This document shows, one piece after another, positions 8,491-35,800 of a stretch of 64,000 nt of DNA (position 1 is its first letter; every line of letters starts with the position of its first letter). The position numbers were made by a program, and so were the translations under genes. The notes beneath the pieces were generated by a model that saw nothing but the letters and a program-made list of their open reading frames with translations, made no database searches and was not told the origin of the DNA. This stretch comes from Diadema antillarum (Eukaryota). The stretch is from NCBI RefSeq assembly GCF_040938485.1, contig NW_027272284.1, positions 744,001 to 808,000 on the forward strand. Direction: 5' to 3'.

Positions 8491-8658
8491 ATGATTACTT
8501 TTTCTGCAAGAAAGCAATTTTTCTAGAATGGAAAAGATTATTCTGCCCACTGTCATTTCTATGGTGAATAGGATGACGACCCTTTTGTATGTCTTGTCCC
8601 CTTCCCTCTGCAGAGCCCATGACCCAAGGTGTTGAGTTCAGTGTCTAGTCGTTACGCC

Positions 8659-8883
8659 ATGCTGGGGGGAGTGCCCCAGGTGGCCTTCTACGGCCACGCT
8701 CCCGAGATGAACTACTTTGACGCAGCGAAGGATGAGGCGGCCTTTGTCCGGTCCCGGCCCCCCTTGCCCATTGACCTGGCCCAGAGCTACCGGCCCCCTA
8801 ACCCCTGGCCGGTCAGTCCCACCTGTGGCAAGGACTTCATCCTGGTCTGTGAGTTCTCGGAATTGGAGGGGCCAAAACCACTG
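8659..8883 (+). CDS. SMCR8: SMCR8 coding exon 1 (exon starts 8614, ATG 8659)
   Basis: [75 protein letters not shown]|gttagt; 225 nt, phase 0. Confidence 0.9.
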
Positions 8884-11800
8884 GTTAGTTGAGTTTGCTT
8901 GTATACATTCAATGTGTAACCTAGTTGTCCTCAATCTGTTGTGCCTTGTAGCCCTTCCAGTCCCTAGGGAATGTTGCTGCAGGAGTTCATCTTGCCTGCA
9001 TCATTTGGCAAATCTGAATACATGCATCTCTTGATAGGAGAAAGTTTTGATGGAATTGACTATAAAGTCATTTTTACAGTTTGTACTTATCTGCACAAAA
9101 TCTCAATAAATGAACAAGTTTGCCAATTTTAGACAGAAACAATTACTTTGATATTCTAAGATCAGTAAGATGTATTGTCAATTTTAGTACCAATTACATG
9201 TATTCTGCATGTGAAATATGGGTTGTGTAAAGTCGCTTTTTGACCAAAACAGATCTCGGATAAAGTATTTTCTCACTCATAAGACATTCTAGCAATGAAT
9301 AATAGGTAATATGAAAAAAATCAACATCGTTCAGTGGTTCCTTGAACTTCAATGGGTTAACACAGATTCCTGGGGCAGCAAATGTCACAAGGGTGTCGAG
9401 AGTTTTAAAATGTAGGTGTGGAGAGAGATTGGGAAGATAAGCTGGGCAGAGCAATGAATGAGGAGAGTTTAAGAAGAGAATAATCAAGATACTCTAGGAG
9501 TGGCAAACTAACAGAGCTATGTAGGTAAGTACAGTAGGGCATGTATAAGATCAGCTCATTGATTAAAGGTTCTATGTAATTCTACCGTGAGGCAAATTTC
9601 AGGTTATGAATAAAATCATGTACTAATTTGTTTCATTCTTCTTTGTTTTTGCTGGTATATAATAATACATCTGTGTGAGTCCATGATAAATCCTGATGTC
9701 AAGCAAGATTTTTGACTTTCTCTTGAACCCAGGCCGTACCTATGAAAAAAAAGAAAAAAAGACAAGTAGTAATCACATCATGATACTGTAAAACCAAAAA
9801 TTTTGGCATGCATAAAATTGTTCTAAATTTCATGAGGAGCCAAGATTCAAGAAAAGTGCATGCAAACTTATACACGATGGATTTAATGCCAGTTGCCAAT
9901 TTGCTAAAGTTTCATGCTGCAAATGTTTATGATCTTACAGTTGCCTCATGGGCAAAACAGGCAGATCAGTGTGTCCTTTATTTACCCCCTTTTGCTAAAT
10001 GTAAGAGTGTTTGAAACATTCACTACCATGTGAATGCTAAGCACACAATGCTCACACTCACCTTGGGCAAATACCCATGATGATGTCCTGTGGATTCTGT
10101 AAATCTTTGAAAATTGGGGGGGGGGGGGGGGCACTGACAATTCAGATCTATTCAAATCTAGATTTCATTTGCTAGTGATATAGAACTGGAAGAAGAAGAT
10201 TTCAGGATACACTGTATGAGACATGCAATTACCCTGTATTTAGTCAGTCTAATTTTTTTTTTTGCAAATCAGAATTTCCCAACAACTTTAACAAGTGGTT
10301 AAATTTGCAGTTGCAGAATTCAGTAATGAATGGATAGATGTATTCATGCATGTTGCATTCATCTTGAGATGAGAGGTAATCATTTCACATGTTGTTTAAA
10401 GGTGCAAATAGTACCTGGCTTGTGAAATTTGTGAAAATAAAAAGCCTTGCAAAATTACATGTAGTAGTTGAGCACTTGAGACAAAACGGGAGGGGGAGGT
10501 GTATTTTACATGTTGCATGGTGTAAAATATGGCAGGAACAGTATACGAATAATTTATGAGTTGTGAGTGCATAGGGCACGAATATCGCACGAGGCGCGAG
10601 ATATGTAAGCCACTGGTCTATTCAACAAGGCGCGTAGCGCCGCGTTGAATAGACCAGTGGCGAATCTCGCGCCGAGTGCGGTATTACGTGCCCCAATGCA
10701 CGAACAAAATCATAAATTATTCGTTTTATACAACACCTTGTCCACAATCACAGTACTAAATTAGTGACCGCTTACTCAGGAAGGCCCAAAAATAAATGTA
10801 ACATCAGGCAGAGAATTGTAAACCACCCTAGGCCCTGTGTACTGCTTTCAAACACTCGTCATGATTCGACCACGACACAGGAATCACAAACTCCGCAGGG
10901 TCTACTAGTATACCTCATTTATTACGCTTACGTTAGATCGAGTTAGGCCTGACTGTTAGGCCGATCTGAGATGTCGGTAGATCTAGTAGTAGGTCTAGAC
11001 TTTGTCTATTTCCGAAAATGATTTTGTATAAAAACACAGAAAAATAATCAAATTACGGTTTCTCAACTTGAAATGAAGTCTTGATTTTGGGATCACTGTG
11101 GTCCACGTAGCAGATCAGAGTCAAAAGTAAAAACACAGCAGGAGGTGTAAAGGTCGCGATACATGCAACTAGCTAGGTAAAGTAGCTGCGCGTTGCAGTA
11201 CTCCGCCGCGCCTGGTATGGGAGACTTACCGGCAGCGCAGCGCAGCCGGCCAGCACGTACAATGTACACTGTAGTTTGCTGGCGCTTTGCTACGGGTGGG
11301 TGTGAGCCACAGAACTCTGTGAGCGGCCATGCATTAGTAGCCCCCCGCGAAGCCGTGCTATAGTACCTTCGAGCCATGCAATAGGCCCATGCCAGGGGCC
11401 TATTGTATGGCTGTCACTCTCAATGAGTTTGATAGGTATTTTCTATTGAATGTCATGTGACATGCTCTTGGCCAATCACAATTCGACATCATTCTGAGGT
11501 GTTGTATAATATGTTATATACCGTCGTAAACAGCAACAGCTCAGTCACATAACATGCACTGACAGAGTTTGAGCTGTAATAGTGAAATGGTGCTTCCATC
11601 AACCTCTGTACACAGATGTTCGTCCTGACTTAATGGGTCATTGCCCATACCATGTGACTGCCTCATAATGGTAAACTCACTTATTGCAGGTTGTGAGCCT
11701 GCTTGTAATGTGATCTATTTCCTGGGACAAAAGATTAAAGCACTCAGTCACATTTGAGTGGTCTTCAATGTTATATTACGGTACATGAAGATTATAGATC

Positions 11801-14800: not shown

Positions 14801-17800
14801 TGTATATTTCTCAGGTGTATTTTGTGGTGTGTTTGTGTTCACATAAAAACAAGTCAACAAACAAAATACTATGATATTTTACTGTAAATGTGAATGTGCC
14901 TTTACAAGTATGTCAGTGAGGTCATCTATTATGACATCACAGACTGTGGAGTGTCAGGGTCATCTGTTTAAGTGAAAATTATGAGAGTAGTTTTTCACAT
15001 GAGTGAAGTCAACTTACAGGGATTTCTAGTATAACATTCATCACTTGCTCTCTGTAGTCACAAAGAGCTACCAGAGCATATCATCCGGATATATTCATGA
15101 TGTAATAAACTATTTTAGAATCCAGTCTGTCGAATTCTTGAGATTTCCTTGTAGTGATTGATTTGAACAATATTCACTGAGGTGATATACAAAGACATAA
15201 ATTGTACTCTGGAACCTAAAACTCATGTCTAGTGGGAGTTGGTAGCAGGACAAGTGTGTCTGTGTCAAGAAATGCAAATATAATCAACTACCAAGTATTG
15301 ACATTAGTCAAGATATCATCACTTCACACTCCCTACCTGAAATACACAAAATGTGATTTACCGGTAATCTCAGAAGAGGAAATCATGTTATGCAGTTAAG
15401 TTTTCAGATCTTTTTTTAAAATACAAGATAGACATCATTGTTTACCAGGCAATTGTACTATTACTCAGTATCTTATGATTTTTTTTTTTAAAGTATCATT
15501 TTGATTGTAAAAGTATTCTATCCACATGTTTTTTTTTCACTCTTTGACATACACACTACATGTATGTTTAAGTATACTATGTAGCGAGTGAAAGCAGTGT
15601 AATGCTGCTTTCTTTACTGAGAAAAATTGAGGGTAAAGTCGTTATCGACAATAAACCAGTCAAATGTTGTCACAGTCTGGTGGCTGCTATACATTTTAAC
15701 TATCAGACCTTCAGCAAACAATTCTTAAGACTGACATGGTGTGAATAGTTCCCTGTTCATACGATTCCTTTATCTTAAAGCATGGAGCTACCAAAAAGAT
15801 GGAGTAACAACGAAGGCCACCAATATTACGTAACCCAACTACGAGCGGTCAGTTCTGACAGACTTCAAAGCACCGCACTCGCTGGGACGGCTTAACTCGT
15901 CCCGCAGGGGATACTTTGGCAAACGATGCTCCGAGCCGCAAAAATGACGTCATACTCACCAACATTGCACATACAATATAGTGCTGTATCGAGTCGAAAA
16001 CTCGACTTGCAACAACATATGGCTGCGCAAAACTTTGCTGAAGACCACGCGCATGCGCATAATATCCACAGGCAAAACAGAGGAGATACCGAGTGCAGTG
16101 CACTTTGAACGAACTGAATCGGCCCATGAACAGCGAAGGTACTGTACAGTGTATTGTCGTCATGCTTTGTGACTTGTAAAGTACATACCCTAAGAATAAA
16201 ATTCTTAATAAAAATCCCTCACATTTCTCCACATATTTCAATATCTGTCCGTAAAGCTGACATTTGAAACTACAATCTTACGTAAGTGTTGACTGCGTAC
16301 AATTGCGTACATTTTATCTATACCGTTGTGAAGCCAGCTGTTATTTGTCTTTGTGTTTGTTCGGGACAGCGTGACGGCCATTGTTGATCGTGTCGAGAGT
16401 GCAGTGTTTGTTTACATGCCGGTCGTATCATATCGTGATTTACATACTAAACGACGGTATGACATGTTAAACAATTTGTTACACTGCAGATTCACTATTT
16501 GTAGCTATAATTAATTCAGAATCATGTTAAATCGAATATGCTCGAAGTCGACGGGGCAGTTGCAGTTTGTGTAGTCCCATGCATTGACGTTCCATGGTGG
16601 AACCATGGAGCTAGGTAACTCCATGGTAAGAACCAGTTTGCGAACGCGCTGCGGATGACGTCATTGTGCGTACGCACTGTCTCATCTGTCATCGCTCTCG
16701 CTCACGGGGGCTTAGCGAGGATTATTTTTTACGAGTCGGCTTCGAGCATCACTTCAAAAGGACCCCAACCGTTGTTACTCCATCTTTTTGGTAGCTCCAT
16801 GCTTAAAGGTTACACATTGTTTTGGAGCTCGTAGTAGAGCCCCATGTACGATGTAGTCTACGATATGTACACAAGTTTTCCGTTCCGCACGAGAACCTGG
16901 CTGCCTATATACAGTATGGAATGGGATAGTAGCAATCTAAAAAAGTAGTCAAAGATTAGAACGACAAGACATCTTAGGATTTGTGCGTATATCCATGAGC
17001 CTTTTTTTTTTGGGGGGGGATGGTTCCCACTTGTAGTTTGGCGTCATGTCTACATGGTAAACAACAAATGCAAAAGTTAGTGTGACCTCGTGTGAACCGT
17101 ATTCCCCCATCTGCTGCCGGGTCAACCATCAGTGTGCTTTGTACACTACTGCGTGTATGGATCTTCCAGTTCTGTGGTTTAATCATCTTGCTCAAAAACT
17201 CAAACTTTAAAGACGCATAGACCTGGAAGTTGCAGGGGCGCTGTTGGATGATAGTGCCGATCACGTTAGCGTTTCTACGAAGATTGCTGAAGTTGAGCTG
17301 TTATCAAGAGTAAAGCTCGTAGCTGTTGCTCAGTAACATTGCTCTCGTTGTCTTCTGCGCGTCATGCAGTCAGTAGTGATGCCAGGGTGCATGCTTCTTA
17401 GTATGACGTCAAAGAAGAAGTTTGCTAAAGCTGTCACCATCAGCCAAATTATCAGCCGAACTGTGATCAGCCACTGACTACAGTGGATCGGACTTCTTCG
17501 GACTCATGGAAATGGGTAAAGCGTAAGCACTAAAGAGGAATTGATAGCATAGGTATCTGTAGGAAACTTGAGCAGTCTACCCGCGTACATTCGACTAAAC
17601 CACTGGGTCTATGTGCCTTTAATATTAGGTGTCATGTGGATGTAAGCTAATCATTGAAGTTTAAAACTTTGAAGATTACAAATGTCGTGTGAACATAACT
17701 TATGATAGATTAGAGGGTGTAATGAACGTGTAATGTGTGGAGATACAGATGGAGAAATGAGACGGGTGATTGACAGGTGGAAGCTGCTAGTGGAAGCATC

Positions 17801-20800
17801 TCATCAATCTCTCATCTTTGGAATCCATTGCTTCACTGGAGGTTAATGTCTTTACAAGGATAGAGAGACATTAGGGTATAACATAGTCAAACACTGAAGG
17901 AACAATGCAGCGTAAAGGAATTTGAGCATCAAAGATTAACCCATTGAGGACGGGCTGATTTTGCTGCAACACGCATTTCCCATAGACACCTGCCCGAGTA
18001 TGGTATCAAAGATTAACCCGTTGAGGACGGCCTGATTTTGCTACAACAACACGCATTTCCCATAGACATCTGCCCGAGTATACTCGGAACTCCTCGTCAA
18101 CAGGTTAACGCGTTCAATTGGGACTGCTCTAGGTGTCATAGTGAGACTGAACTTAAATCTCTTGAATTATCTGTATGTTGTGATTTTTCTTTTCTATTCA
18201 ATTTAGTATAGTATCATGTTTATAAGATATCATATCGTATAATTAGCAATCATTCAAATATGTCTGTAGCAAGAATCTGTTTTAGGTGTTGTATGATAAT
18301 GGTATGATAATGGAAATAGTAACATTAAATCTATAAAGAGGTATATCTACAGTGTATGATGTATGTTTTGATCATTGCAGATTACAATACCCAAAGATGG
18401 AGGGAGTTCCTTTGACAAGAACATGTATGCTGTAAAAATCATGGCTGTTGACTACAACGCAACCAACTATGCCCGCACAACGTAAGTACAAGTATAGTAT
18501 TTCCACTCTCCTATTTCATTTAACGTACCTGTTCCATAGTTCAATGTTTTTATGGCTGTAATTGAGGAACTACATTTCCCTATAACATCAGTTGCTTTGT
18601 GCATCGATTTTTATGCCTCCGCCACGAAGTGGTGCCGGAGGCATTATGTTTTCGGGTTGTCCGTCCGTCCGTCCGTCCGTCCGTCCGTCCGTCCGTCCGT
18701 CCGTCCGTCTTTCCGTCCGTCCGTCCGTCCTTCCGTCCGTCCGTCCGTCCTTCCGTCCGTCCGTAATGAATTTTGTGGACAGGGTAACTACCAAAACCTT
18801 TTGAGGTATCCTAATGAAACTTGGCATGTATGTGTATTAGGGGGTGAAGTTGTGCCTATCAACTTTTGGGTGCACATGCTCAAGGTCAAAGGTCAAAAGG
18901 TCAAGGTCAAATGCTTAAAATTTTACTATTTCCCCCATATCTATGCAATGCCTGAAGATATTTTCTGGAAACTTAGTGTATACATGTACTACCCAATTAA
19001 GATTCTCTGGTGAAAGTTTGGGGTCATGAGGTCAAAAGGTCAAAGGTCAAAAGGTCAAGTAAAATGTTAAATTCTCACTTTTTTCTCTGTATCTTGGAAA
19101 TTGTTTAAGGTATCTTCATGGAACATAGTATATATATGCATCTACTGACTGGCAGTGGTTATCTAGGGAATTTAGGGTTCATGGGGTCAAAGGTCAGGGG
19201 TCAAAGGTCAAGGGTAATACTTCAAAATTTTACTATTTTCCTTATATTTATGCAATGCCAGCAGGACTTTTTTTTTTTAAAACTTGATGTATGCCTGTAT
19301 AACCCAATAGAGATTCTCTGGGATTTTTTTTTTTTGCCAAGAAGGTCAAAGGTCAAAAGGTCAAAGATCAAGTGAAAGTGCTGAACTTTATTCTTTCTCC
19401 ATATCTCGGAAGTGGCTCAAGTTATCTTGAAACTTAGAACATGCCGAATTTATGTATGTTCTGCCTGACAGTGATTCTCTTATAAATCAAAGGCCAGATG
19501 AAAATGATAACAATTTACTGTTCAATACAGAAATTGCACTTTTTCTCCATACCTTGAAAATTACTCAGTGCATAAACTTATGAAATGGTCAAAGTCAAGT
19601 TAAAGTTCTTTAATCCCCAAATACATGCTCTCCTATTCATCCAATAAACATACATGGTAGGTCAAGGAAGGTAAACATTCAATACATTTGTGACAAACAT
19701 GTCATTTTAATATTTTGCCAATTTTGTGAAAATGTAATCACACATTGTCCACATGTACTATAGACCTATTAGGAGAATCATGCATTATGGCGGAGGCATA
19801 CCAGTCGCCATAGCGACATTTCTAGTTAACTATGTCTTTTGCGGAGTTATCTAAAATTCTAAGAGCACGATCAAATTTTGAATTATCCCTTATCAGAGTA
19901 ACAGTATGACAATTTTGAATATGAATAATCAAATTACATCAGTACCGTGTCTGTTCTAAATTTATTTTATGCAAATTTCAAGTGTGTTTACGATGTCTCT
20001 ATATTCCTAGTATGTGAAAATGCAAACTTGGGGTATTACACAAGAAGCTTCAAAATCACATGACTGAAGTGACTATCAATGTGATGACAAAATATTATAT
20101 TTGTTGATGTACTGAGATTTGGGTAATTTTTTGGCATTCCTTTTGTAACCCTGAAAATTAGATTCCTCTCATACAGTGGTACAGCTGTATATCATTGTAG
20201 AGACACCACATGTAGGTATTTCAGACCTTTCCTCAGAATGATAAATCTGGATTCTTTTATTTTATTTTTTTTTTTTTTGCGATAGAGGGGGAATAAATAT
20301 ACATGTAAATACCATAGATTTCCAGAGAATTTATTCGTATCCTGAAAAGAAAAAAAAAAAGAAAAAAGAAAAATTCTAGCCATTATTCGTGGTACAGATG
20401 GTGAGCATATTCTCAGGTGACTTGGGGCTTGTTTTTTAAACACTAAGGTGTATTACCGTAAGATTTCATACACAATGTTGACAGATGCTATTCTTCAACC
20501 GTGCAAAATGTTTTGACATTAGCAAAAGGGATATATGACCTTTAAGATGTGCTTTGTCCTTTTAGTCAAGGACAGACAACATTTGATCACCCAATCTGAC
20601 ATGCCCACATGCACACACTCATCACACATGAAACACAACATATCGAAGCCGAGCCAACGGCCGTCCCTCACCCATCCCATCCCCTCCCATGAATAGCTGC
20701 AGTTTGGATGCTGTGTCCTTGTCTTCCTACAAAGTGTGCATAATAATTATAGCGAGGGCTGTGGGTCATTAAGAGACTGTGAATGGGATTTTATGCGCTG

Positions 20801-23800
20801 GCCACATTAACACACTTTACCTTCTTCATTATGAGTCAGCCAACAGTAATATCATGTGACCAAAGTAAAATGGCAAAGCTAAAACTGGGTTAACAGTCTC
20901 AGCATACTGATTGTATGTACATGAAAGCACTGCGACATTTCCTTACTCGATTCCGAGGCAGACTCCAATAAAAGCGTAATGCATGTATATGCACCTTGAC
21001 CGTTTTATTTAGTGGATTTGGCGCAAGATACAGTAGCGCTCACGGTAACCTGTGTCACTCCCGCGTATTCCCGCGTGCTTCTTCGAGTGAATAAATCGGT
21101 GTTCACTTCCGACATACCTGCGGGGATACGCGGGAATACAGCGGGAGTACAACGCAGCGAGACCGCGTGCGATTTATCGTGTGGGAAACACGCCAAAACA
21201 GCCCGATGTACGATCAACGCAAGCACGATGTACGATCAACGCAATGTATGAACAATGCTATGCTTCGCATGGCTGATGAGTGTGCGATTTGCGCTGTGTT
21301 GGTCTACAGACCGTACATCCTTGCACTAAGTTGCAGCGCGCGTGTTCTTGCAGACAAACCAGCTCAGTCACAGTTGCAATTTGCAGAGTAAGAAGAAAAG
21401 CACGCAAAGAAAGCTGCCTAATTGTAATTTAATTTCACGTGCCAGCACATCGTACTAGTACCTCGCACGGAGGGCCCTGCAAGTAGCGAGGTTGGAGGGA
21501 CTCGATTCTACCTTCCTGTCAGTCCACTGCACAAAACTGCAAAGCAGCAAGCAACAGTAACACGAATGAAGCGATGTTACAAGCACGTGATTTCCCGAAG
21601 TTTAGGTGATGAAACGTCGTAGACTCACAGAGAAATTACAAAAAAAACCCTTTCTTTTCTAATTCGTGCACTCACCTCGTGACACATTTCCTGAGAAGAG
21701 TTCTTCTATCTTTGTCAATAAATTCACATCGAACCATGCAGTAATTTTCCAGAAAAAAAAAAAAAAAAAGATTCATCTTTAAACAATCAAATATTCCTGA
21801 ACGGGGAAAACCTTGTGAAGAAATTTATACTACATGTACGGTATCCGTAAATCGCTACTCATTCTCGGGGAAGTTGCACATCTCTCCCGTAAGTGGAGGA
21901 GTGTGAGGGAAACGCGGGAGTTACAAAACTCGCACCCCTCCCATAGTGAGAGCGTGTTGTGCGGGAAACGCGGGAGTTATAAAGCTCGGATAACAAAGAG
22001 CGTACCCCACCCGTATTAAGAGCAGGGTGTGAGGGAAACGCGGGAGTTACAAAGCTCGCACCCCTCCCATAGTGAGAGCGTGTTGTGCGGGAAACGCGGG
22101 AGTTACAAAGCTCGGATAACAAAGAGCGTACCCCACCCGTATTGAGCAGGGTGTGAGGGAAACGCGGGAGTTACAAAGCTCGCACCCCTCCCATACTGAC
22201 AGCGTGTTGTGTGGGAAACGCGGTAGTTACTAAAGCTCGTACCCCTGCCGTATTATTTTGTGCCCGTTTACATTTCCTTTTTTTTTTTAATCAGGTGATG
22301 AAACATCGTAGACCAACAGAAAAATAACAAAAAGCCTTTCTATTTCTTTTCTAATTTATGCACTTTCTCTACTGATCTAATCTTTTTCTGTTCTTCTTCT
22401 AATTACTGTCATTACAGTAGACCTATTAGTATCATCACAACAACTTTTTTACTATAACCTCAGTTTCTATCTTTCGTCTGCATGGGCACCAAGTGTTTTC
22501 TTTATTCAAGAGAAAAAAGAAAAAAATCACAAGCGTTGCGCTCAATCTACTTCGTTACGGTTATTATTGAGAAACTTCAATATACTATAGCAACGATTGT
22601 ACTAGAAATGCATATCAGCATCAAAGTAAGCCCATTTTCTATTATTCCTTGAGTTACAATAATCTCGCAGCCTTCCCTTGTTAACTCTATACCAGAGGAG
22701 GGATTACGGGGTAATTTCAAAGTTTGCGCTCTCTATTCAGTGGAGTGCGGTAAACGCGGGAGCACTAATCTTTTATCCCTCTCGTGATGCTCAGAGGAAG
22801 TTGAGGGAATACGCGGGAGGTACAAAAGCTTGCATATGCCCTCCGTGTTCACTGGAGCGTACGCGGGAATCGCGGGAGCTACAAAGTTTAATCTCGACTC
22901 CTCCCGTGTTCACAGGAGGTTCATCAGTGGAGTGCGCTTCTGCGGTAAACGCGGGAGCACTAATCTCTCATCCCTCTCGTGATGCTCAGAGGAAGTTGAG
23001 GGAATACGCGGGAGTTACAAAGCTCGGATAACAAAGATCGTACCCCTCCCGTATTAAGAGCAGGGTGTGAGGGAAACGCGGGGGTTACTATAAAGCTCGT
23101 ACCCCTGCCGTATTATTTTGTGCCCGTTTTACATTTCTTTTCTTTTTTTAATCTGGTGATGAAACATCGTAGACCAACAGAAAAAGAACAAAAAGCCTTT
23201 CTATTTCTTTTCTAATTTGTGCACTTACTCTGTGACACATTTTTCTGGGTAAAGTTCTTCAATCTTTGGCAATAAATTCACATTCATACTTTTTTCGAAA
23301 AAAATTGTGTTGCACAATATAAGTTGAGGGAATACGCGGGAGTTACAAAGCTCGGATAACAAAGATCGTACCCCATCCCATAGGGTGTGAGGGAAACGCG
23401 GGAGTTACAAAGCTTGTACCCCTCCCGTACTGAGAGCGTGTTGTGCGGGAAACGCGGGAGTATACTATAAAGCTCGTACCCCTGCCGTATTATTTTGCGC
23501 CCGTTTACATTTCCTTTTTTTTTAATCAGGTGATGAAACATCGTAGACCAACAGAGAAATGACAAAAAGCCTTTCTATTTCTTTTATAATTTATGCACTT
23601 GCTCCGAGACACATTTTCTGGGGAAAGTTCTTCAATCTTTGGCAATAAATTCACATTCATACTTTTCTCGAAAAAAAAAAGATTGTGTTGCACAATAAGC
23701 AATGAAATATTCTTGCTCACATTTTCTTCTCTACAGTTATGGTTTAATGAGAAAAATAGCGATATTTCCTTATAGTTTAGGCTTTATTGAAAAAAAAAGA

Positions 23801-26800
23801 GTATGGTTGGATGTTTTGTGATACAACTGACATACACATTTGCACCAAAAGTGATATCCTGAACATTTTTAAAATCATGATCATCAAATAGATACAGTAA
23901 AATGTGATATATAATTTTTGTTTACTATATCCCTTTTTTCAATTAGATATAATTGCATTTCTTCAATTTCACAAGCTCTGAATCTTTGATCTAACAGTAC
24001 CATAATACAAAGTGCCTACATTTTTTTCCTTTTTTTTTCCACTCTTTTTTAGTGGCCTAAATCACTTAGCGATAATGGTATATACTATAGTTAACGCATC
24101 ATGGTGTGATAGAAAATTATTTTCTGGCACGGGGTATATCCCTTTCTCATTTTCGCATGAGTGACATAGCTCGTATCCCCCTCCTGTATTGAGAGTAGAG
24201 AGTGCCCCTCCCCCAACTGATACTTCATAAGTGATATCCAGAGTGCGTGACTACACGAGTGACGAGGTTCGTATCCCGCCCGTATTGAAAGTAGGGTGTG
24301 CAGGATTACGCGGGAACTTCAAAGCTGATTACCCCTCCTGTATCGAGAGAAGGGGCGCGGGAAAACGCGGGAGCAACAAAGGTCGTAATCAACTTGCCTG
24401 TATTGTGATTACAAAATGCGGGAGCACGCGGGAGCTTCAAGGGTCATTACCCGTTCCCTCCCTTATTGAGAGTTAAACAGGGAGAGCGGGACTACACGGG
24501 AGCTACTACCTTTCTTCTCATTTACATGACCACTTTCAGTGTTAATGCCTTCACAGACCACAGGCAATTATTGAAATTATATAATAGGCATGCTTTATTT
24601 TCACTTACCTTTCTCCTCACTTTCACGAAGAGTTTGTCGGTATATCATTATCCTCACTTCCTTGACAGAATGCTTGCCCTTCCCATAAGGTCTTGGTTCA
24701 CATGTCCATCGACAAGCTCCGGATCTTAAATTTATATGTTAAAATTTAATATCTGATGAACGCTATTAACGAAAGCTTACCTCTCTGCCACGACACGGAG
24801 TGATCATGCATTTCTTCATCTGGCGGCAAAATATTACATACGGTGAATATCCAAATGATGGTTGTACACCCGGAAACTTGAGTCGTAACGTGGCAAGCAA
24901 AATCCTCGACGTTGTTGCAATATCAAGTGTATATTGTAGATTTCATTGACATCCAATGAAGTGAAAAGGGAAAACTTGTCACATAGTTTCATAACCTTAC
25001 TAAGTTAGTGTTCATCACACGCAGACGAAGAAAAATTTGTCAAGGCAAACCTATGGTTTCACTATGCGTTCACTTTTTGAATTGTATTCAAATAATCTAT
25101 TCTGTACTATCCTTAATCTGATCAATCTTGCTGCTCTTCTCTGCGTCTTCTAGTATCATCGTAACTTCGTTTCTTTCAATGTCCTTTCCGATAGGCGATA
25201 AGGCAACTGTCTTCTCTATATTTCCTCTGAGCACCAAATGGTTTCATCAGTCAAAAGAAAAGAAAAAGAGGAAGACAAACAGCGAGGAGCTCGATATGCA
25301 ATTTATATACATTCTTCGTAGAATATTCATGTTTTGGCAGGATATTGGTCCTGGCAATCACTATAATGTCTATTTCATGTATTTATGAACTGTGCATTCT
25401 TTTCTTCAAACCCACCAGTTATCAAACTCATTTTCTTTACTGGAGTAACAGTAACAGTAACAGTAATGTCGCATCCTCCCCTTGTTAAGACAGGATACAG
25501 AGGGGCAATTTCAAAGTTCGCACTCTCTATTCAATGGAGTGCTCTTCTGCGGTAAACGCGGGAGCACAACACTGATCTCAGACTCCTTTCATGATGTTCA
25601 GAGGATGTTAAAGGAATACGCGGAAAGTGCTACCAGCTCCACAATACTTTGGGTGCTGAGGATTACGCGGAAGACACAAAAGCTTGCACGTACCCCTTCC
25701 ATATTCCTTGGAGCGAACGCGGGAATCGCGGGAGCTACAAATCTCGACTCCTCCCGCGTTCACAGGAGGTTCTGAGCAAATACAAGCATACACAAATCCA
25801 TTCCAGAATTGTATTTTCTGTTACATTTAGTACTATCCATGGCCACATTTTTTCGGGATTGTGGTACCGGGAATTTTATATTGTACTTCTTCCCATCCAC
25901 AAGCTTTGGTTCTACTAATCATTTTTTTTTTCCGGAAACTTTTTTTTTTTTTTTAATAGTATACATGTAATATGGCAAACCTGTAAATCCATCAACAGAT
26001 TACAAGTAGTTTTTGATTTGTTCTGCATTTTGATATACAGTAGTTACAAAAATCCATGGGAAGAGGGAAACTTGTCAAATGCATATAGTATTCAGCATTC
26101 ACCTTAAACAAACAAATGCGTTCATCTTTCGAACCTTATACTCACATCTTTACAACTGGTCAGTCTTTTTCTGTTCTTCTTCTTCTTCTTCTTCTTCTTC
26201 TTCTTCTTCTTCTTCTATACTGTCATTCGTATCATCACAACAACCTTGTTGATAACCTCTGTAATTTTCTTTTAGACAAGCAGCAAACTGTCTTTCGCTA
26301 TCTTTCCTCTGCATGAGCACCACGTGTTTTCATTATTCAAGAGAAAAAATCACAAGCGTTGCACTCTTAATCAATACTTTCTTGACAGAGTATTTGTTAT
26401 GGCCGATTTTGGTCCGGGTCATCAGTAATGAACATGGGAACCATTTTTCAAACTCACCAACTTAAGATCTATAGACATGAAGCAGAGAGGCGGAACTGCT
26501 TGAATTAATGAACTATAAACTATGGGTATATACGGTTATATTTACTTGAGAAACTTTAGTATAATATAGCAACGACTGTAGACATGCATATCAGCATCAA
26601 AGTAGGTCTATTTTCTATTATTTCTGGAGTTAAATAATCTCGCATCTTGTATACTTGTTAAGACTATTATATTATACAGAAGAGGAGGGATTACGGGGTA
26701 ATTTCAAAGTTCGCGCTCTCTATTCAGTGAAGTGCGGTAAACGCGGGAGCACTAATCTTTTATCCCTCTCGTGATGCTCAGAGGAAGCTGAGGGAATACG

Positions 26801-29800
26801 CGGGAGGTACAAAAGCTTGCATGCCTTCCGTGTTCACTGGAGCGTACGCGGGAATCGCGGGAGCTACAAAGTTTAATCTCGACTCCTCCCGTGTTCACAG
26901 GAGGTTCAGCGTGAATGCAAGCTTACACAAATCCATTCCAGAACATACTTTTTTTTTGTTTTGTTACATAGGTCCTGCATGGCCACATTTTTCGGGATTG
27001 TCGTACCAGAAATGTTATACTGTACTTCTTCAAATCCACAAGCTCCGGTTCTTAATAAAATAATAAATAATCAAATATGAAATTTTATACAATGTATATA
27101 TACATTTTTCGGAAACGTTGTATATAGTAATAAAAGATGGCAAATTAATCCCTCGAAACATCACAAGTCTTTGTTTTTATCTTTTAGTTTGATAACAGTA
27201 GTAACAAAAATCCATGGTTAGAGGGAAACTTATCAAATCACTCAGCAATATTATTCAGCGTTCACCCAATAAACAAACAAAATAGCATGCGTTCACCTTT
27301 TGAACTGTATATACTCACATATTTACACCCGTTATCTAATCAAATCTTTCTCTGTTCTCTTCTTCTACTTGTTACTGTCATTATTAGTATTATCATAACA
27401 ACTTTGTTATCCTCTATAATTTTCTTTTGGACAAGCAACAAACTAACTGTCTTTCTCTATCTTTCCTCTGCATAAGCACCACGTGTTTTCATTATTCGAG
27501 AGAAAAATAATCACAAGCGTTGCACTTAACCAATACTAGTCTTTCTTGACAGAGATTTGTTATGGCCGATTTTGGACCGGGTCATCAGTATAATGAACAT
27601 GGGAACCATTTTCTTCAAACTCACCAGCTTGAGATCTTACAGACATGAAGTATTGGGAGGCGGAACAATTAGAATTAACGCATATTTATTTGAGAAACTT
27701 CAGTATATTATAGCAACGACTGAATACCAGTCTTGCATAATCAGCAGCAAAGTAGCCAGTATAGGCCTATTTTCTTTTATTTCTGGAGTTAAACTTAATA
27801 ATCTCGCATCTTTTACTTGTGAAGACTATTATACAGAAGAGGAGGGATTACGGGGTAATTTCAAAGTTCGCGCTCTCTATTCAGTGGAAAGCGCTTCTGC
27901 GGTAAACGCGGGAGCACTTATCTCTCACCCCTCTCGTGACGCTCAAAGGAAGTTTAAGGAATGCACGTACGGGAGGTACAAAGATTGCATCCCTTCCGTG
28001 TTCATTGGAGCGTACGCGGGAATCGCGGGAGCTACAAATCTCGACTCCTCCCGCGTTCACAGCAGGTTCAGCGTGAATACAAAGTTACACAAATCCATTC
28101 CAGAATATTATTTATTTATTTATTTTTTTTAACACTGGTCCTGCTTGACCACAATTTTCAGGATTGTCGTACCGGAAATTTTATACTGTACTTCTTCAAA
28201 TCCACCAGCTCTGGTTCATAATCAAATATTATACAATTTTTTTTTTCCGTACACGTTTTTTCTTCTAGTAATATCAGATGGCAAATAAATCCCTAAAAAC
28301 ATTACAAGTCCTTATATTATTCATTTTCATAACAGCAGTAACAAAAATCCATGGTAAGAGGGAAATTTATCAAATCATTAGAGTATTCTGCATTCACCTT
28401 AAAAACAAGCAAAATTTAATGCGTTCACCTTTCGTACTGTACTCACATATAAATACACCCATCATCTTACCAATCTGTTTCTGTTCTTCGTCTTCTACTT
28501 ATTACTGTCATTATTACTACTATCATAATAACTTTGTTACTATAACCTCTATAATTTTCTTTTAGACAAGCAACAAACTGGTATAACTGTCTTTATCTAT
28601 CTGTCCTCTGCATGAGCACCAAGTGTTTTCATTATTTAAAGAAACAAATATCAAAATCACAAGCGTTGCCCTCTACTTTCTTGACAAAGTATTTGTTATG
28701 GCCAATTTTGCTCAGGGCCATCACTAGGTAGTAATGAACTTGGAACCATTTTCTTCAAACCCGCACCAGCTAGAGATCTTAGACTTGAAGCAGGGAGGCG
28801 GAATTGCTTGAATTAACGCACTATCAATCTATGGGTACGGTTATAAATTATTTGAGAAACTTAAGTATACTATATAGCAACGACTGCATATACTATAGAC
28901 ATGCATATCAGCATCAAAGTAGGCCTATTTTCTATAGTTGAGTTACAATAGTCTCGCATCCTTCACTTGTTAACTCTATACCAGAGGAGGGATTACGGGG
29001 TAATTTCAAAGTTCGCACTCTCTATTCAGTGGAGTGCGCTTCTGCGGTAAACGCGGGAGCACTAATCTCTCACCCCTCTCGTGATGCTCAGAGGAAGTTG
29101 AGGGAATACGCGGGAGGTACAAAAGCTTGCACCCCTTCCGTGTGCATTGGAGCGTACGCGGGAATCGCGGGAGCTACAAATCTCGACTCCTCCCGCGTTC
29201 ACAGCAGGTTCAGCGTGAATACAACCTTACACAAATCCATTCCAGAATATTTTTTTTTTTTTTTTAATTTTTAACACTGGTCCTCCTTGGCCACAATTTT
29301 CAGGATTGTCGTATCGGAAATTTTATACTGTACTTCTTCAAATCCACAAGCTCTGGTTCATAATCAAATATTATGCAATTTTGTTTTCCGTACACGTTTT
29401 TTCTTCTGGTAATATCAGATGGCAAATAAATCCCTAAAACATTACAAGTCCTTGTATTATTCATTTTGATAACAGCAGTAACAAAAATCCATGGTAAGAG
29501 GGAAATTTATCAAATCATTAGAGTATTCAGCATTCACCTTAAAAACAAACAGATGAATTCATCTTTCGTACTGGACTCACATATAAATACACCAATCATC
29601 TATTCTTATCAATTTTTTTGTGTTCTTCGTCTTCTATACTTATTACTGTCATTATTACTACTATCATAATAACTCTGTTACTATAACCTCTATAATTTTC
29701 TTTTAGACAAGCAACAAACTGGTATAACTGTCTTTATCTATCTGTCCTCTACATGAGCACCAAGCGTTTTCATTATTTAAAGAAAGAAATATCAAAATCA

Positions 29801-32800
29801 CAAGCGTTGCCCTCTACTTTCTTGACAAAGTATTTGTTATGGCCAATTTTGCTCAGGGCCATCACTATATAGGTATAGTAATGAACTTGGAACCATTTTC
29901 TTCAAATCCGCACCAGCTAGAGATCTTAGACTTGAAGCAGGGAGGCGGAATTGCTTGAATTAACGCACTATATAATCTATGGGTATGGTTATATTTGAGA
30001 AACTTAAGTATACTATAGCAACGACTGTACTAGACATGCATATCAGCATCAAAGTAGGCCTATTTTCTATTATTTATTGAGTTACAATAATCTCGCATCC
30101 TTCCCTTACTCTATACCAGAGGAGGGATTACGGGGTAATTAAGTTTGCGCTCTCTTTTCAGTTGATGTGAAAGCGCTTAACTGCGGTAAACGCGGGAGCA
30201 CTAATCTCTCACCCCTTCGTGATGTTCAGAGGAAGTTGAGGGAATACGCGGGAGGTACAAAAGCTTGCATGCCTTCCGTGTTCATTGGAGCGAACGCGGG
30301 AATCGCGGGAGCTACAAATTTCAACTCCCCTGCGTGTTCACGGGAAGTTCTGAGCGAATACACTAGTCAGGAGGTAAAATCGAAATTTGTCAAATCATTA
30401 TGAAGATGAGAGTTCACAAATGCGTTTATTTTTCGAATCGTATTACATCGTCTGTGTCTACTCTTTGCCTCCTCTTGTAATCATAATTTTTATTGTCTCC
30501 TCTCATTTTGCAAGGGGTCTGTGCCGTCCATTTACTCACTTCACAAAAGCTAATTCCAATAATCATTTATGTCATTATTATCATGACATCATAATTTTCT
30601 TTTAGCTCTATAATTTCCTTACGGATATTTCTAAGCGATACGACAGTTGTTTTCTAGCTCTATTTTTCGTATGAGCACGGTATGGTTCCTAGCTTTTCAT
30701 ATAACTTAAGCAAATTTAATAAACAAAATTGTCGATCGCGCGTGCCAGCTGTTGTGATCGCATTTTTCTCGACAGGTTGTGAGTATCAATGACATTTCGG
30801 GGAATACACGTTCTTTGGGGGCTACACGTGTTTTCATATGGTTCTCTGCTAAACTTAATTCTCTGACGTTCGTGGCATAAAGTTACGGCAAATATATAGG
30901 CCATAAGTAAAGCAAACAAATGGAAATTTTAAAAAAAAATCTTTCTCGTACGGTACGTTGCCTTACGCTGTGACAGGGAACAGCTGATAACCATGATACG
31001 AACTAGCACAGGCTTATTAATAGCTCATGCGGTACCAGAAACACATGGAAGGCAATATTATTTATTTATTTATTTATCATTATTATTATCATTATTATTA
31101 TTATTATTATTTTTGGTACTGCCAACCAATCGACTCGGCGGTCATACAGCACGGTCGGAGAACTAGATGTGAGACACAGGTGCGTCAGTTACCAGTGGGC
31201 CTACAAACTGTACTTTACGTACCTACAGGAATACTGTACTACTATAGCAAAAAACACATCGTGCTGTTTTCATGGGACTGGAAATAAATTCAACGTTCTG
31301 CATAAACTGTCGTGTTGCATTGATTCTTGCCGTTCGATGCCTCCTCGGGACTCGCTCGAAATGAGAAGGTAACGATATTATACCGTTGTGTTGCGTTCGT
31401 GGTCCAATGCGAATGTCTTCTAGTCTTTAATGATATGTAGCATAAATTTTACTTGGGTTTTGCTGGGATTAATTCCACATTTGTTTTTCAATGTACAAGT
31501 TTTGTACTGTGATTACGCCACTCGTAACACATACAGTGCACATTGCGTCGTCAGGAACAGCACGACAAGCACAACGTTGAATCGCGCGCTGCTAGCTGTG
31601 CTGTGCACAGTGTGCATGCATGCTGCAATCGCGATCGTACAACTCGCACTCGCTCGTGTGGGCGGGAGTTCCCTGTACTGTGTGCGGTATTGTCGCGATT
31701 TTTGGCGCCGCACACATCGTCCACGGACTTGCGAAAATTCTGCATGACAGAGCGCGGGAGTACGCGGGAGGACGCGGGCATACGCGGTAATCGCGGGAGT
31801 GACACGGACCCCCACAGGTTACCGCGAGCGGGACTGTAAATTGTTGATAATTATCATTTAAATATTTTGTAGGTTTTCTCGTAAAACGGGAGTCTTGCCA
31901 AACATTTGTCAATGGAATCCTCCATCCGACGTAATTTTGTTTTCCATTGTAATGTGATAAGTATGGATAGGAAATGAGACAAGATTGCCTACTTGCCTGC
32001 AGAAAGGAAATGCCTTTGATAAGATTAGTTTCAGAATTACATTTCTCTGTGGTTCAGTGTGTTTGCAATGCTCATATTGCAGAACTGCCCCGTTAGAGCG
32101 GATTAAAAATGATAGCCCTTCTTACTAGTCTTCTCAGTTTCAGCTCCTGTCTGTTAGTTTTTATGGAAGTTTTGATACCAGCACAGCTTGAATGACAAAT
32201 TTTAAATCCAACTCCCTCTTATTTTAGTATCTCAGTGAAAGGTTAACTCTAACTGTATATTGGACTTGTGTAGTGCATCATGTATATTCTGTGTTCAGTA
32301 GTCATTATCAGGTAGATACTTGTGAAATGACCCAAATTTAGACTGTACCTTACGTTGTACGGTGTATTTGTACATGTATACATGTAAAATCTGACCACAA
32401 ATCTTGATATGATCAGGAGACGTGCCAGATGAGTTCAAGCTATGTTGAGCCTTCATGTTATTGTATACAAAATCTTTGTGAGGCAATCATTCTAAAATAT
32501 GAGAAGTTACTTAAATTATGTTTGAACTAAAATAACTATTTTGTTATTTGGTATCATTGACATTTATATACATGAAGAGGTTATCCCTGTCAAAAACATG
32601 AAAATATTTTCAGCCTGTGGGCACGCACAAAGAAAGCTCCATTATCATGTGATCATGGTATATCTGTGTGGCTACTATTATTTTAGCAAACTATGTAGTT
32701 CTTCCATTGTTAGGTTTGAGGAGCAAATTTTGGTGTACCTGTAAAACCACAGGTCAGCTAACTTTACAGAATAACAGGAAATCTCAGGAACGATGTGATG

Positions 32801-35800
32801 CATGTTTTCACGAAGGGACATTTGTTTGTTCTAGGTGAAGTGCAGACACCAAACACTAGGGGAACATCAGTGCTACTGACATGGTAGAGCGAAAATAGGT
32901 TTAGGAACAAGACATTCTGTTGATTAAAAGGGGAATGAACCCCAAGTATGTTACAGCTGTATAAGTGTATAATATTATGTTGATTTATTGAATGCAGAAT
33001 TATTCATAGAACACTTCAGTGAAGTTTGATGAAAATCAGACAATCCTCTTGAAAGTTATAACTTTTTTACGTTTCGGTCCGAGGCTGGATATTAACGAAA
33101 ACTATGACAATCTTTGATATTGCAGTTGGACAACGATATAATGAAAGTACTAAAGAGAATTTACCATCTTCATTCTTCTAGCATGTATTGAAAGAGTACT
33201 TGGCTTATACATTGTACCTCTTTCAGGAGGCAAGATAATATTATTTTACCTCAAACTTTACTGATATTTTCTACCAATATTTCTGCATGCACTCAATCTA
33301 CATCCAATTTTTATGTTCCATTCTACTTGAAAAATCACCATAGTTGAAAAGGTCTTATCATAATTTACTTAGCTTAACCAGTCATTTCCCCCAAACCATA
33401 TTTATGTTGTTTGTTGCTGCATTCTTTTGTTATGACTTTTGGTGTAAATTGGTGTAAATTGTTGGTGTTTCGTGAGGAAGAGTAACAAATTTTCTTTCAT
33501 TTGACCCCTGTGTTAATCGTGTAGAATTCTCTTTTTTCTTTTTTCCCCTTCAGAATATTCAGAAGCCTAAACATGCATCTGCTGAATTTGTGACTGACTT
33601 CTCTAAGTAATTGATAACACATTTTGAAGATTGATTTCCTGTTTCTGTTCCAAGTTGGCGTTAATAAAAATGATTTTTTCAAAGTTTGTGCAGATTTCAC
33701 AACTTTAACTATTAAATGCCAGATAATATTTCATCAGTATAAGATATGCAGTGAATATAGGTGCTAATCTAATAATGGTAAAATCATCATTCCTGCAGCA
33801 AATATCCCTTGGGACTTGATGAGGGTTATAGAGCCAATAATAACATCAGGCTGGGTAGAGAGACAGTGAAAGTTTAGATTTGTTATTCGCTGAATACTAA
33901 ATGTGATATGTTTTTGTAATCTACGTCCTATCCAGGAATACTTTCAAGCTATCGGAGGATACAGCAGTCATCATGGAAGACAGACAAGAAGGAACCTACT
34001 CCTATGTAAGTCTCATTTTGGATTCTAATGTCGTCAGCTGAGAACCAGAAGGGCGCTATCATGTTCTAAGATTTGAGTGTGAATAAAAGTGAAACAATCA
34101 ATTTTTATGAAATAAAAAGTTTATTTTTAATCAAGAGTGGGTGGATCAATATGCATTGTTCTGAATATGGGGCAAAATAGCACCCTTGTGGTTTTGATTT
34201 TTAACATTTTACTGAAAATGAAAATAATTAGAATTGACACCATAACATCGAGGAGATTGAGCTCTACAACATGATACCAATAACTGAATACCCCCCAAAA
34301 GTGCAGTAAAAGCCCTTCTGGTTCTCAGCTGACGATATATGGTAGAAGATGGTTTAATAGAAAGTTTATGTGGAATACACGTTATGTATTTAGCAGAGGG
34401 GATATTTTCCACTTGACAGAACTTTTATGGAATCATGACATGTGAATAAGTCTGAACACGTGAGATGTTTTTATATAGGGAAATAGTCTCAACCACAAAA
34501 TTGTAAACAAGTGAAGTTTGCTGAAATAAGTCCTGTGTGAAAAGTTATATCATGTGAAAGATTCTACTTTTACAAATCTGTTCTTTTAATAGTTTAATAG
34601 GTCATAGTGACTGTAAGCCTTGAAGGAGACTAGTCTTAAGACCTGGTATTGTGGGGAAACATGGGTGGTTGGATTGCATCGGTCTTACAATGTAATTAGT
34701 TGCCAAGAGGGGTACATTCGGAATCGCGAATAGCGGCCGTCAGCGGATGCGTGCAAGGAAGCGTATGAAAAGCTCATTGATAATGGTCAATTCCGGTCAA
34801 GATTATTTGGCTAGGTGTGTGTACATTCATAGAATTCAGTAATGAAGCTTTTTGTAGACAATTTGTTATGGTTGCTCTTGAATGCATCCAAGCAGGGCCA
34901 GCTTTACCACTCAGTGGTATCCCCACACTACTTGGTCTAAAACAAGAAGACAGTCAAAGTTGGACAAAAAGAAAGAAGGCTTACAGAATTCTTTAATGTA
35001 ATATTACAATGCATGGACAGGCTAAAGGGATTCTTCATTATGCAACGCTCAGTGATTCCCAACCCAATTAAAGGACGTGCAGCTATTCCTGCATGCAGTG
35101 ACCAGCACAGCTCTGGGATTTAACAATTTCTGAGAAGATTCTTAGCCTTCTCACTCCATTAATCTAGGGGCAATCTAGGGTGAATCAATGCCAGCCTGCT
35201 GGTATCGGGAAAATGGTCTTCAAAGAAAAAGATGCTGATCTACATGTGTACATTCTTAACTTCATGAAAATGTACAAACGAAGGGCCATGTAAATTGTAA
35301 TGTATTGCACAGAAAGGGTAGTTGATTTGCTCTAGATTGTGGTGTTATCGTTTTCAATTTTCTCTGAAATGAATTCTCTGTAGAGTTGCCATGTTTGAAG
35401 CCACAGTATATTGTAGGTGCAGATGCTGAGACATGTACATCATATCACTCATAAACCTGATGAACACTCCATGTATGCCCTTGTTCAAGTGAACAGATAC
35501 CTAAATGATGAAATTACTAAACTACAAACGGACTACTTCTAGGTTAATTAATTTCTTGGAAAGCAATCATCAATTGTCAAGACGTAGTACATTGCACTTT
35601 CTGGAAGCTTCTGTAATAGTCAAAGTGTCATAGAATGGTGAGGTGTAAATTGATTGCTCTTACCAAAACAAAATTCCTGTCATCCTGAACTGACAGCAAA
35701 AGTGATAAAAGTTTCAGTTTTCATTCATAAATGATATTTCTGGCTCATTGAGTCCCTTCATACCTTTAGCACTATTGTTACTGGTAGGCCTACTAGTCAT

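What the first reader, a model, noticed from the sequence alone, without database searches (positions are those of the whole stretch)
21031..31836. 10.8-kb TIR-bounded, transposase-less element that carries a multi-level satellite built from its own terminal motif
Seen in sequence: TA|CAGT...ACTG|TA ends, imperfect TIRs (21/24 identical, then a shared TCACTCCCGCG), no transposase-sized ORF, and an interior dominated by nested tandem repeats. It makes up about 70% of SMCR8 coding intron 2 (18482-33935). Established: TA TSDs with CAGT ends are typical of Tc1/mariner-pogo elements, and foldback-type elements (Drosophila FB, Galileo, Tetris; sea urchin TU) carry tandem arrays of transposase-binding sites and can seed satellites. 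Inference: this is a large foldback-like satellite-carrier family in which the array has expanded in one orientation between intact ends. I do not recognise it as a named family.
Basis: partly seen in the sequence, partly recalled or inferred. Interest (0 to 1): 0.85.

Follow-up and report, generated by a model that had tools for sequence, protein, structure and literature searches.

The report
Transposase-less TA-flanked transposon carrying internal satellite
A 10.8-kb mobile-DNA relic with no gene of its own sits in an intron of an SMCR8-like gene, and two thirds of it is tandem repeats built around a short motif copied from its own ends; this kind of element is already known.

Summary
Window 21031-31836 is bounded by TA|CAGT...ACTG|TA. 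The first 24 terminal nt match 21/24. After a 10-nt indel, a further 14/14 nt are shared (TCACTCCCGCG). The 24-nt end motif occurs only at these two places in 64 kb.

No ORF has a Pfam match. 67% of the interior is internally repeated: 10-bp subrepeats at the right end, 56/126-bp arrays, and a ~1.14-kb macro-repeat of about 4.3 units. CGCGGGA occurs 40 times on the + strand inside the element and never outside it. CpG density jumps exactly at both junctions.

One other copy of the interior, with a different arrangement, was found on a TARA metagenome scaffold.

Best reading (0.68): a non-autonomous cut-and-paste DNA transposon, probably Tc1/mariner-pogo type. Its right subterminal motif cluster, a putative transposase-binding site, was amplified into a co-oriented internal array.

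"Foldback-like" is not supported: the TIRs are about 45 nt and there are no inverted arrays.

Satellite-carrying TIR elements are already described (Tetris, Galileo, Xenopus miDNA4), so this is a new member of a known kind. Family copy number, empty sites, an autonomous partner and Repbase/Dfam identity could not be tested with these tools.

The scan's first readers flagged other satellite-filled TIR elements elsewhere in this genome. None is known to share this sequence.

The parts
21029..21030 (.). Left TA, putative target-site duplication
   Evidence: Read directly; matches the TA at 31837-31838
21031..21076 (+). Left TIR: outer 24-nt terminal motif (21031-21054) plus the inner motif TCACTCCCGCG TATTCCCGCG
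   Evidence: I1
21053..21150 (+). Left-end subterminal palindrome: two minus-oriented motifs pair with three plus-oriented motifs (stem about 22 bp, loop about 45 nt)
   Evidence: DNA fold -33 kcal/mol, z = -5.0, 0 of 200 shuffles as good; the right end has no equivalent (z = 0.16)
21151..21876 (+). Left unique region, CpG-rich; 21604-21730 is homologous to 'spacer B', which also follows the 56-bp arrays at 22270-22370, 23128-23310 and 23502-23700
   Evidence: D17
21877..22246 (+). Young array of 56-bp monomers organised as 126-bp dimers (2.7 dimers, 95% matches); each monomer carries GGGAAACGCGGGAGTTACA
   Evidence: TRF; D1/D3/D11
22247..23700 (+). Mosaic of segmental copies: spacers, one GC-rich four-monomer module (22684-23031, 84-88% identical to the macro-unit modules), further 56-bp monomers and two more spacer-B copies
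   Evidence: Self-BLAST
23701..25501 (+). Low-repeat middle: AT-rich unique stretch (23701-24150), old degenerate run of about six 56-bp monomers (24151-24500, four CGCGGGA), unique spacer (24501-25480)
25502..30362 (+). Macro-repeat of about 1.14 kb x 4.3. Units start at 25514, 26671, 27828, 28973 and 30108 (the last truncated). Each unit is a GC-rich module of four diverged 56-bp monomers, ending in one inverted motif, plus an AT-rich spacer of about 900 bp
   Evidence: pairwise unit identity 82-85%, U2-U3 94%
30363..31752 (+). Right unique region, CpG o/e 1.33, includes a (TTA)n microsatellite at 31074-31111
31753..31800 (+). Right subterminal array of 10-bp subrepeats (consensus CGCGGGAGTA, 4.9 copies)
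   Evidence: TRF
31792..31836 (-). Right TIR: inner motif (31792-31805), 10-nt insertion relative to the left end (31806-31815), outer terminal motif ending ACTG
31837..31838 (.). Right TA, putative target-site duplication
   Evidence: Read directly

Best explanation
This is one copy of a non-autonomous class II (cut-and-paste) DNA transposon inserted at a TA dinucleotide in intron 2 of an SMCR8-like gene. It encodes nothing. It would have to be moved in trans by a TA-targeting DDE/D transposase; Tc1/mariner-pogo type is the most likely (inferred).

The transposase would recognise the 24-nt outer terminal motif and the adjacent CGCGGGAG-containing inner motif (inferred). The right subterminal region, which holds five phased 10-bp copies of that motif, was the seed for the interior. 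Duplication by slippage and unequal exchange produced 56-bp monomers, then 126-bp dimers, then a four-monomer module that picked up a 900-bp spacer and was amplified as a 1.14-kb macro-unit.

All of these layers keep the orientation of the right end, so the element is strongly asymmetric: about 45 nt of inverted sequence on the left, and a 10.7-kb 'right arm'.

At least part of the array existed before this copy and a second copy (L001) diverged, so the array appears to travel with the element as cargo (shown for the order of events; transposition itself is inferred).

The element has kept its CpGs inside a CpG-depleted gene body. Either the insertion is recent or the element escapes germline methylation.
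For: - Ends. The 24-nt terminal motif is present only twice in 64 kb, inverted, with 0 expected. TA lies on both flanks. The gapped TIR alignment extends to about 45 nt.
- Same history throughout. CGCGGGA occurs 40 times on + inside and 0 times on + outside, and 5 times on - inside, of which 2 form the left TIR.
- Inner-TIR motif in the interior. The 20-mer recurs 7 times inside with at most 3 mismatches, always in the right-end orientation, with 0 expected.
- Link to the right end. The last double motif of the macro-unit module tested (29140-29215) matches the right subterminal segment 23/27, score 38 against a shuffle maximum of 27. That stretch is invariant in all seven aligned modules.
- Junctions. 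CpG per 500 bp goes 12 to 40 at the left boundary and 46 to 6 at the right. CpG o/e is 1.01 in the element and 0.51 in the rest of the window.
- No coding capacity.
- Second copy. L001, a TARA metagenome scaffold, joins the 56-bp array region (86% to 21993-22923) directly to a macro-unit that is 95.8% identical to U3, but only 90.9% to U2. The units had therefore diverged before the two copies split, and the array layout varies between copies.
- Precedent. Tetris TIR-220 repeats share a 37-bp stretch with the terminal domain, and Galileo's internal TIR repeats carry extra transposase-binding sites (PMC4079207). The Tc1/mariner MITE miDNA4 carries a satellite of variable copy number (PMC12628747).
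Against: - Only one full copy was seen, so no second TIR pair, no empty site and no autonomous partner could be examined.
- A 2-bp TSD is weak evidence on its own.
- Dense 10-bp-phased subterminal repeats are more typical of hAT, CACTA, P and Mutator ends than of Tc1/mariner (my own knowledge).
- 10.8 kb is large for efficient Tc1/mariner mobilisation (my own knowledge).
- L001 could be a rearranged ortholog from a related species rather than a transposed paralog.
- Binding of any protein to the motif is untested.
Confidence: 0.68

Rival explanations
1. Same kind of element, a non-autonomous cut-and-paste TIR transposon with an amplified subterminal motif, but belonging to a superfamily other than Tc1/mariner-pogo. 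One example would be an animal CACTA-like lineage with very short TSDs, whose transposases use many subterminal binding repeats.
For: - Five phased 10-bp subterminal repeats at the right end.
- Motifs in both orientations at the left end.
- Terminal CAGTA differs by one base from CACTA.
- My own knowledge: En/Spm TNPA binds such subterminal repeats.
Against: The flanks share exactly TA and nothing longer, which is the Tc1/mariner-pogo hallmark. CAGT is a common Tc1/pogo terminus (my own knowledge). No protein is available to decide.
Confidence: 0.12
2. A rolling-circle Helentron-derived carrier (HINE-like). These elements are common in marine invertebrates. They hold co-oriented central tandem repeats between a left module (subTIR plus complementary IR) and a right module (subTIR plus palindrome).
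For: - Co-oriented central arrays.
- The left-end inner motif is accompanied by a complementary inverted copy.
- A (GTCC)26 microsatellite of the type found in HINEs lies 2.3 kb upstream in the same intron.
- HINE features are taken from PMC7492417.
Against: - HINE inverted repeats are subterminal, 11-12 bp, with no TSD and insertion at TT (PMC7492417). Here the inverted repeat runs to the very termini, spans about 45 nt, and is flanked by TA/TA.
- The left hairpin has a 22-bp stem and 45-nt loop, not a 7-12-bp IR at 1-12 bp distance.
- There is no 3' palindrome at the right end (z = 0.16).
- There is no GTCY microsatellite inside the element.
Confidence: 0.07
3. Not mobile as a unit: an intronic, CpG-rich satellite that grew in place, whose two edges resemble each other in inverted orientation because both derive from the repeated motif. 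The TA flanks would be coincidence.
For: The inner TIR part is the array motif itself. TA is a common dinucleotide in this AT-rich intron. Only one full copy was seen.
Against: - The outer 21-24 nt of the ends are not part of any array monomer, yet match each other 21/24 in inverted orientation, only there.
- About 850 bp and 1.4 kb of unique, CpG-rich sequence lie between the ends and the arrays.
- CpG density changes exactly at the CAGT/ACTG boundaries.
- A second copy with a different layout exists.
Confidence: 0.08
4. Two independent insertions (solo ends or two small MITEs) flank an older, unrelated satellite.
Against: - Each terminal motif has no partner nearby.
- The interior monomers carry the inner-TIR 20-mer with 0-3 mismatches and a 23/27 copy of the right subterminal segment, so the ends and the interior are related.
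- CpG statistics are uniform across the ends and the interior.
Confidence: 0.03

Closest known systems
miDNA4 of Xenopus tropicalis (Tc1/mariner MITE carrying a satellite; Scalvenzi and Pollet, as summarised in PMC12628747 and PMC9659126)
   Same: A non-autonomous TIR element assigned to Tc1/mariner. A tandem repeat lies inside the element, and its copy number varies between copies.
   Different: miDNA4 is a small MITE thought to have captured a pre-existing repeat. Here the element is 10.8 kb, the repeat is hierarchical (10 bp, 56 bp, 126 bp, 1.14 kb), and it is built around the element's own inner-TIR motif.
Tetris (Drosophila virilis) and Galileo (P superfamily) foldback transposons (PMC4079207; PMC3688188)
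   Same: - No ORF in Tetris.
- The internal tandem repeats share a stretch with the terminal domain of the TIR (37 bp, about 80%, in Tetris).
- In Galileo the repeats carry extra transposase-binding sites.
- The repeats can seed satellites.
   Different: In both, the arrays lie within long inverted arms (true foldback), and the TSDs are 7-10 bp. Here the arrays are co-oriented, the TIRs are about 45 nt, and the flanks are TA.
Xstir satellite, derived from the TIR of the Xmix MITE in Xenopus laevis (Hikosaka and Kawahara 2004, as listed in PMC9659126)
   Same: A satellite derived from the TIR portion of a MITE.
   Different: Details could not be read here (the paper is not in the library). The organism, sequence and scale differ.
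HINE / DINE-1 / Cg_HINE Helentron-derived satellite carriers (PMC7492417)
   Same: Co-oriented central tandem repeats between conserved end modules; dispersed short satellite arrays in genes of marine invertebrates.
   Different: HINEs are rolling-circle elements with no TSD, TT insertion sites, 11-12-bp subterminal IRs and a 3' palindrome. None of these is seen here.

Membership tests
Tc1/mariner-pogo superfamily (non-autonomous member) | TA target-site duplication | tested here: met
   TA at 21029-30 and 31837-8, with no longer shared flank. Single copy only.
Tc1/mariner-pogo superfamily (non-autonomous member) | Terminal inverted repeats reaching the element ends, commonly starting CAGT/CAGG | tested here: met
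   CAGT...ACTG; 21/24 outer match, about 45 nt with one indel. That CAGT is typical of Tc1/pogo is from memory.
Tc1/mariner-pogo superfamily (non-autonomous member) | Mobilised by, or derived from, an element encoding a DD(E/D) transposase with matching TIRs | not testable with these tools
   There is no coding remnant in the element, and the rest of the genome is not searchable. Scans of public collections for the TIR gave 0.
Tc1/mariner-pogo superfamily (non-autonomous member) | Multiple dispersed copies, each with its own TA TSD; empty sites with a single TA | not testable with these tools
   Only one further interior fragment was found (L001), and it has no ends.
Foldback elements (FB, Galileo, Tetris, sea-urchin TU) | Long TIRs (hundreds of bp to kb) composed of tandem subrepeats in inverted orientation, so that the arms can fold back | tested here: not met
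   Self-BLAST gives no minus-strand hit. The longest inverted pair is the 52-nt terminal one. Motif orientation is 40 plus against 5 minus.
Satellite-carrying non-autonomous TIR elements (descriptive class: miDNA4, Tetris and the like) | TIR-bounded, no ORF, internal tandem array | tested here: met
Satellite-carrying non-autonomous TIR elements (descriptive class: miDNA4, Tetris and the like) | Array copy number or layout differs between copies of the family | tested here: inconclusive
   L001 joins the 56-bp-array region directly to a U3-like unit, unlike the window copy. But L001 is 1.46 kb, lacks ends, and its locus is unknown.
HINE (Helentron non-autonomous) | No TSD, insertion at TT; short subterminal IRs; 3' palindrome | tested here: not met
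   TA/TA flanks; IRs are terminal and about 45 nt; no significant fold at the right end. Criteria from PMC7492417.

The most novel reading that the evidence does not exclude
The roughly 45 co-oriented copies of the inner-TIR motif may be functional transposase-binding sites kept by selection, not neutral by-products. The motif cores are invariant in all seven modules, including the second copy (L001), despite two CpGs each. On this reading the element is a 'binding-site battery': it either soaks up transposase as a decoy or sink, or helps recruit it so that an unusually long (over 10 kb) TA-type element can still move. It would also mark a previously unnamed family of satellite-dispersing Tc1/mariner-like elements whose CpG-rich arrays stay free of gene-body methylation.
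Probability: 0.12. Interest if true: 0.6.

Novelty: new member of a known kind. Interest (0 to 1): 0.3.

Why it matters
If the family assignment holds, this copy is a clean, well-delimited example of a transposon's own end-recognition motif growing step by step (10 bp, 56 bp, 126 bp, 1.14 kb) into a satellite-like array that is then carried around the genome. That is one proposed route for satellite birth. It also shows a 10.8-kb CpG-rich insert tolerated inside an intron of a conserved gene whose surrounding DNA is CpG-depleted. That makes it a convenient natural probe of whether gene-body methylation spreads into young insertions. Neither point is new in principle, so the value is as a documented case and a lead to a family that may be abundant in this genome.

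Tried and rejected
- Protein-level search for other copies through spurious ORFs. The 191-aa satellite ORF gave one real hit, P0001/L001. ORFs over the right end on both strands gave nothing.
- An exhaustive representative search with a 110-aa module ORF gave only P0001 plus bacterial repeat proteins. P0002 lies on a 30% GC contig of giant ORFs and P0005 is a cadherin-repeat protein in a bacterial operon. Neither has DNA similarity to the window, so both were rejected as spurious.
- Exact look-ups of 12 window ORFs found none in the collection.
- DNA pattern scans for the TIR and for the monomer core in JGI metagenomes, GTDB genomes and IMG/VR all gave 0.
- The scan's own index gave nothing by sequence or by motif word beyond this same stretch.
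- Organism identification failed: the Atlas search on a neighbouring exon-like ORF gave no usable hit, and the TARA sample id appears in no paper.
- Idea that each 56-bp monomer is a hairpin: rejected (z = -0.1 and -0.5).
- Idea that each macro-unit is a head-to-tail junction of a whole ancestral element (right inner end followed by left inner end). The right-end match is significant (23/27). The left-end match is only 9 nt and lies within the shuffle range. Not supported.
- Rfam and tRNA scans, looking for a SINE, ribozyme or tRNA-derived origin: none.
Full report
**1. What is there**

The sequence reads ...AAGA TA|CAGTAGCGCTCACGGTAACCTGTG TCACTCCCGCG... at 21029 onward, and ...CGCGGGAGTGACAC GGACCCCCAC AGGTTACCGCGAGCGGGACTG|TA AATT... 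ending at 31838.

The first 24 nt of the two ends match 21/24 in inverted orientation. A degenerate pattern of that 24-mer is found only at these two places in the 64-kb window, one per strand, against none in 100 shuffles. With one 10-nt insertion in the right end (31806-31815), the inverted match continues through GTGTCACTCCCGCG (14/14) and about 10 nt further. Both ends abut TA, and no longer flank is shared.

**2. Coding capacity**

- The longest stop-to-stop frame is 200 aa and runs through repeats.
- Ten frames from unique and repeated parts gave no Pfam match near any gathering threshold.
- No Rfam family and no tRNA was found.

The element is non-coding.

**3. Interior**

67% of the 10,806 bp has a paralogous match elsewhere in the element, and nothing matches the rest of the window. 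The layers are:

- (a) A 10-bp subrepeat (consensus CGCGGGAGTA), 4.9 copies, at the right end, 31753-31800.
- (b) 56-bp monomers arranged as 126-bp dimers at 21877-22246, with 95% matches between dimers.
- (c) Segmental copies of monomers plus a 'spacer B' at 22086-23700.
- (d) An old, degenerate monomer run at 24151-24500.
- (e) A macro-repeat at 25502-30362. Units start at 25514, 26671, 27828 and 28973, with a truncated unit at 30108. Each unit is a GC-rich module of four diverged 56-bp monomers followed by an AT-rich spacer of about 900 bp. Units are 82-85% identical, and U2-U3 are 94% identical.

**4. Link between ends and interior**

- CGCGGGA occurs 40 times on the + strand, all inside the element.
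- On the - strand it occurs 5 times inside. Two of these form the left TIR, and three close the macro-unit modules. It occurs once outside the element.
- The 20-mer of the inner left TIR (GGGAATACGCGGGAGTGACA, read on the - strand) recurs 7 times inside with at most 3 mismatches. All are in the orientation of the right end, with 0 expected.
- The last double motif of the macro-unit module tested (29140-29215) matches the right subterminal segment 23/27, score 38 against a shuffle maximum of 27. That stretch is invariant in all seven aligned modules.
- The left end also carries three plus-oriented motifs about 50 nt inward of its two minus-oriented ones. This gives a strong DNA hairpin (z = -5.0). 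The right end has none.

The element is therefore highly asymmetric. About 45 nt of the left end is inverted, and everything else follows the polarity of the right end. There are no inverted arrays, so it is not a foldback element.

**5. Boundaries**

CpG counts per 500 bp go from 12 to 40 across the left junction and from 46 to 6 across the right junction. CpG o/e is 1.01 inside against 0.51 outside. The two unique terminal regions are the richest, at 1.23 and 1.33.

Within the macro-units, CpG positions have changed no faster than other C/G positions: 5.1% against 4.6%, on small numbers. The sharp steps at exactly CAGT and ACTG argue that the whole 10.8 kb has one history, different from that of the host intron. 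The insertion is either recent or protected from the process that depleted CpG in the gene body. The methylation interpretation is an inference.

**6. A second copy**

A spurious 191-aa ORF in the satellite found one protein, P0001, from a 1,459-bp TARA metagenome scaffold (L001).

- L001 aligns at 86% to 21993-22923 and then continues into a macro-unit.
- That unit is 95.8% identical to U3, but only 90.9% to U2 and 84.7% to U1. U2-U3 are 91.8% identical over the same stretch.
- The units had therefore already diverged when the L001 copy and the window copy separated.
- The layout differs. L001 lacks the roughly 6 kb that separates these parts in the window.
- No part of the window matches L001's left half better than 92%. 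It is therefore unlikely to be a simple allele, although a rearranged ortholog in a related species cannot be excluded.

All other attempts to find copies failed.

**7. Context**

The upstream ORF at 8623-8889 gives SMCR8 chains as the two best PDB hits, at the expected N-terminal position, though weakly (E = 0.07). The element fills 70% of that intron.

**8. Interpretation**

The best-supported reading is a non-autonomous cut-and-paste transposon that inserted at TA, with an internal array amplified from its own right subterminal motif cluster.

- The superfamily (Tc1/mariner-pogo) rests only on the TA flanks and the CAGT termini.
- The dense phased subterminal repeats and the size are atypical for that superfamily, so I hold the assignment at roughly 55%, within an overall 0.68 for the element being a mobile TIR element of this kind.
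- That the motif is a transposase-binding site is an inference by analogy with Galileo and Tetris (PMC4079207).
- Rivals are another superfamily, a Helentron-type carrier, an in-place satellite, and two unrelated insertions. Each fails at least one tested feature, or lacks any positive evidence.

**9. Novelty**

TIR elements that carry or generate satellites are documented. Examples are Tetris and Galileo, and the Tc1/mariner MITE miDNA4 and the Xstir satellite derived from the Xmix MITE. Rolling-circle HINEs do the same in oysters.

This element is therefore a new member of a known kind. Its distinguishing points are its size, its four-level repeat hierarchy, the strict one-way polarity, and the CpG contrast with its host intron. 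I could not check Repbase or Dfam, so an existing name cannot be excluded.

First-stage notes of this scan describe several other satellite-filled TIR elements on other pieces of the same genome. I did not test them, and none is known to share this sequence.

Noticed in passing
window 15774-16808: A roughly 1-kb element with 39-nt TIRs that are 97% complementary. The arms begin and end with TTAA, so a TTAA target (piggyBac, Kolobok or Sola2-type MITE) is possible. It lies in the previous intron of the same gene.
   Followed up: partly
window 18659-18764: A (GTCC)26.5 microsatellite with 92% matches, just inside the same intron. GTCY microsatellites are a hallmark of Helentron-derived HINE elements in bivalves and of some lepidopteran MITEs (PMC7492417, PMC9659126).
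   Followed up: no
window 5988-6114: An interstitial (ACCCTA)n array of about 21 copies, i.e. TTAGGG telomere-type repeats on the other strand.
   Followed up: no
window 1-447 and 52758-53149: Two short satellite-like arrays with nearly the same period (148 bp x 3.0 and 149 bp x 2.1). Whether they are related to each other, or sit inside mobile elements, was not checked.
   Followed up: no
window 21961-21975, 22087-22101, 23445-23459, 24352-24366: Alternate 56-bp monomers read GCGGGAAA next to the core motif. On the other strand this is TTTCCCGC, the textbook E2F site (from memory). A host-factor reading of the motif array was not tested.
   Followed up: no
window 21031-31836 versus flanks: The element is a CpG-preserved island (o/e about 1.0; 1.2-1.4 in the terminal 500 bp) inside a CpG-depleted gene (o/e 0.3-0.6 over most of 32-64 kb). 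Repeat units have diverged by 5-25% without excess CpG loss.
   Followed up: partly
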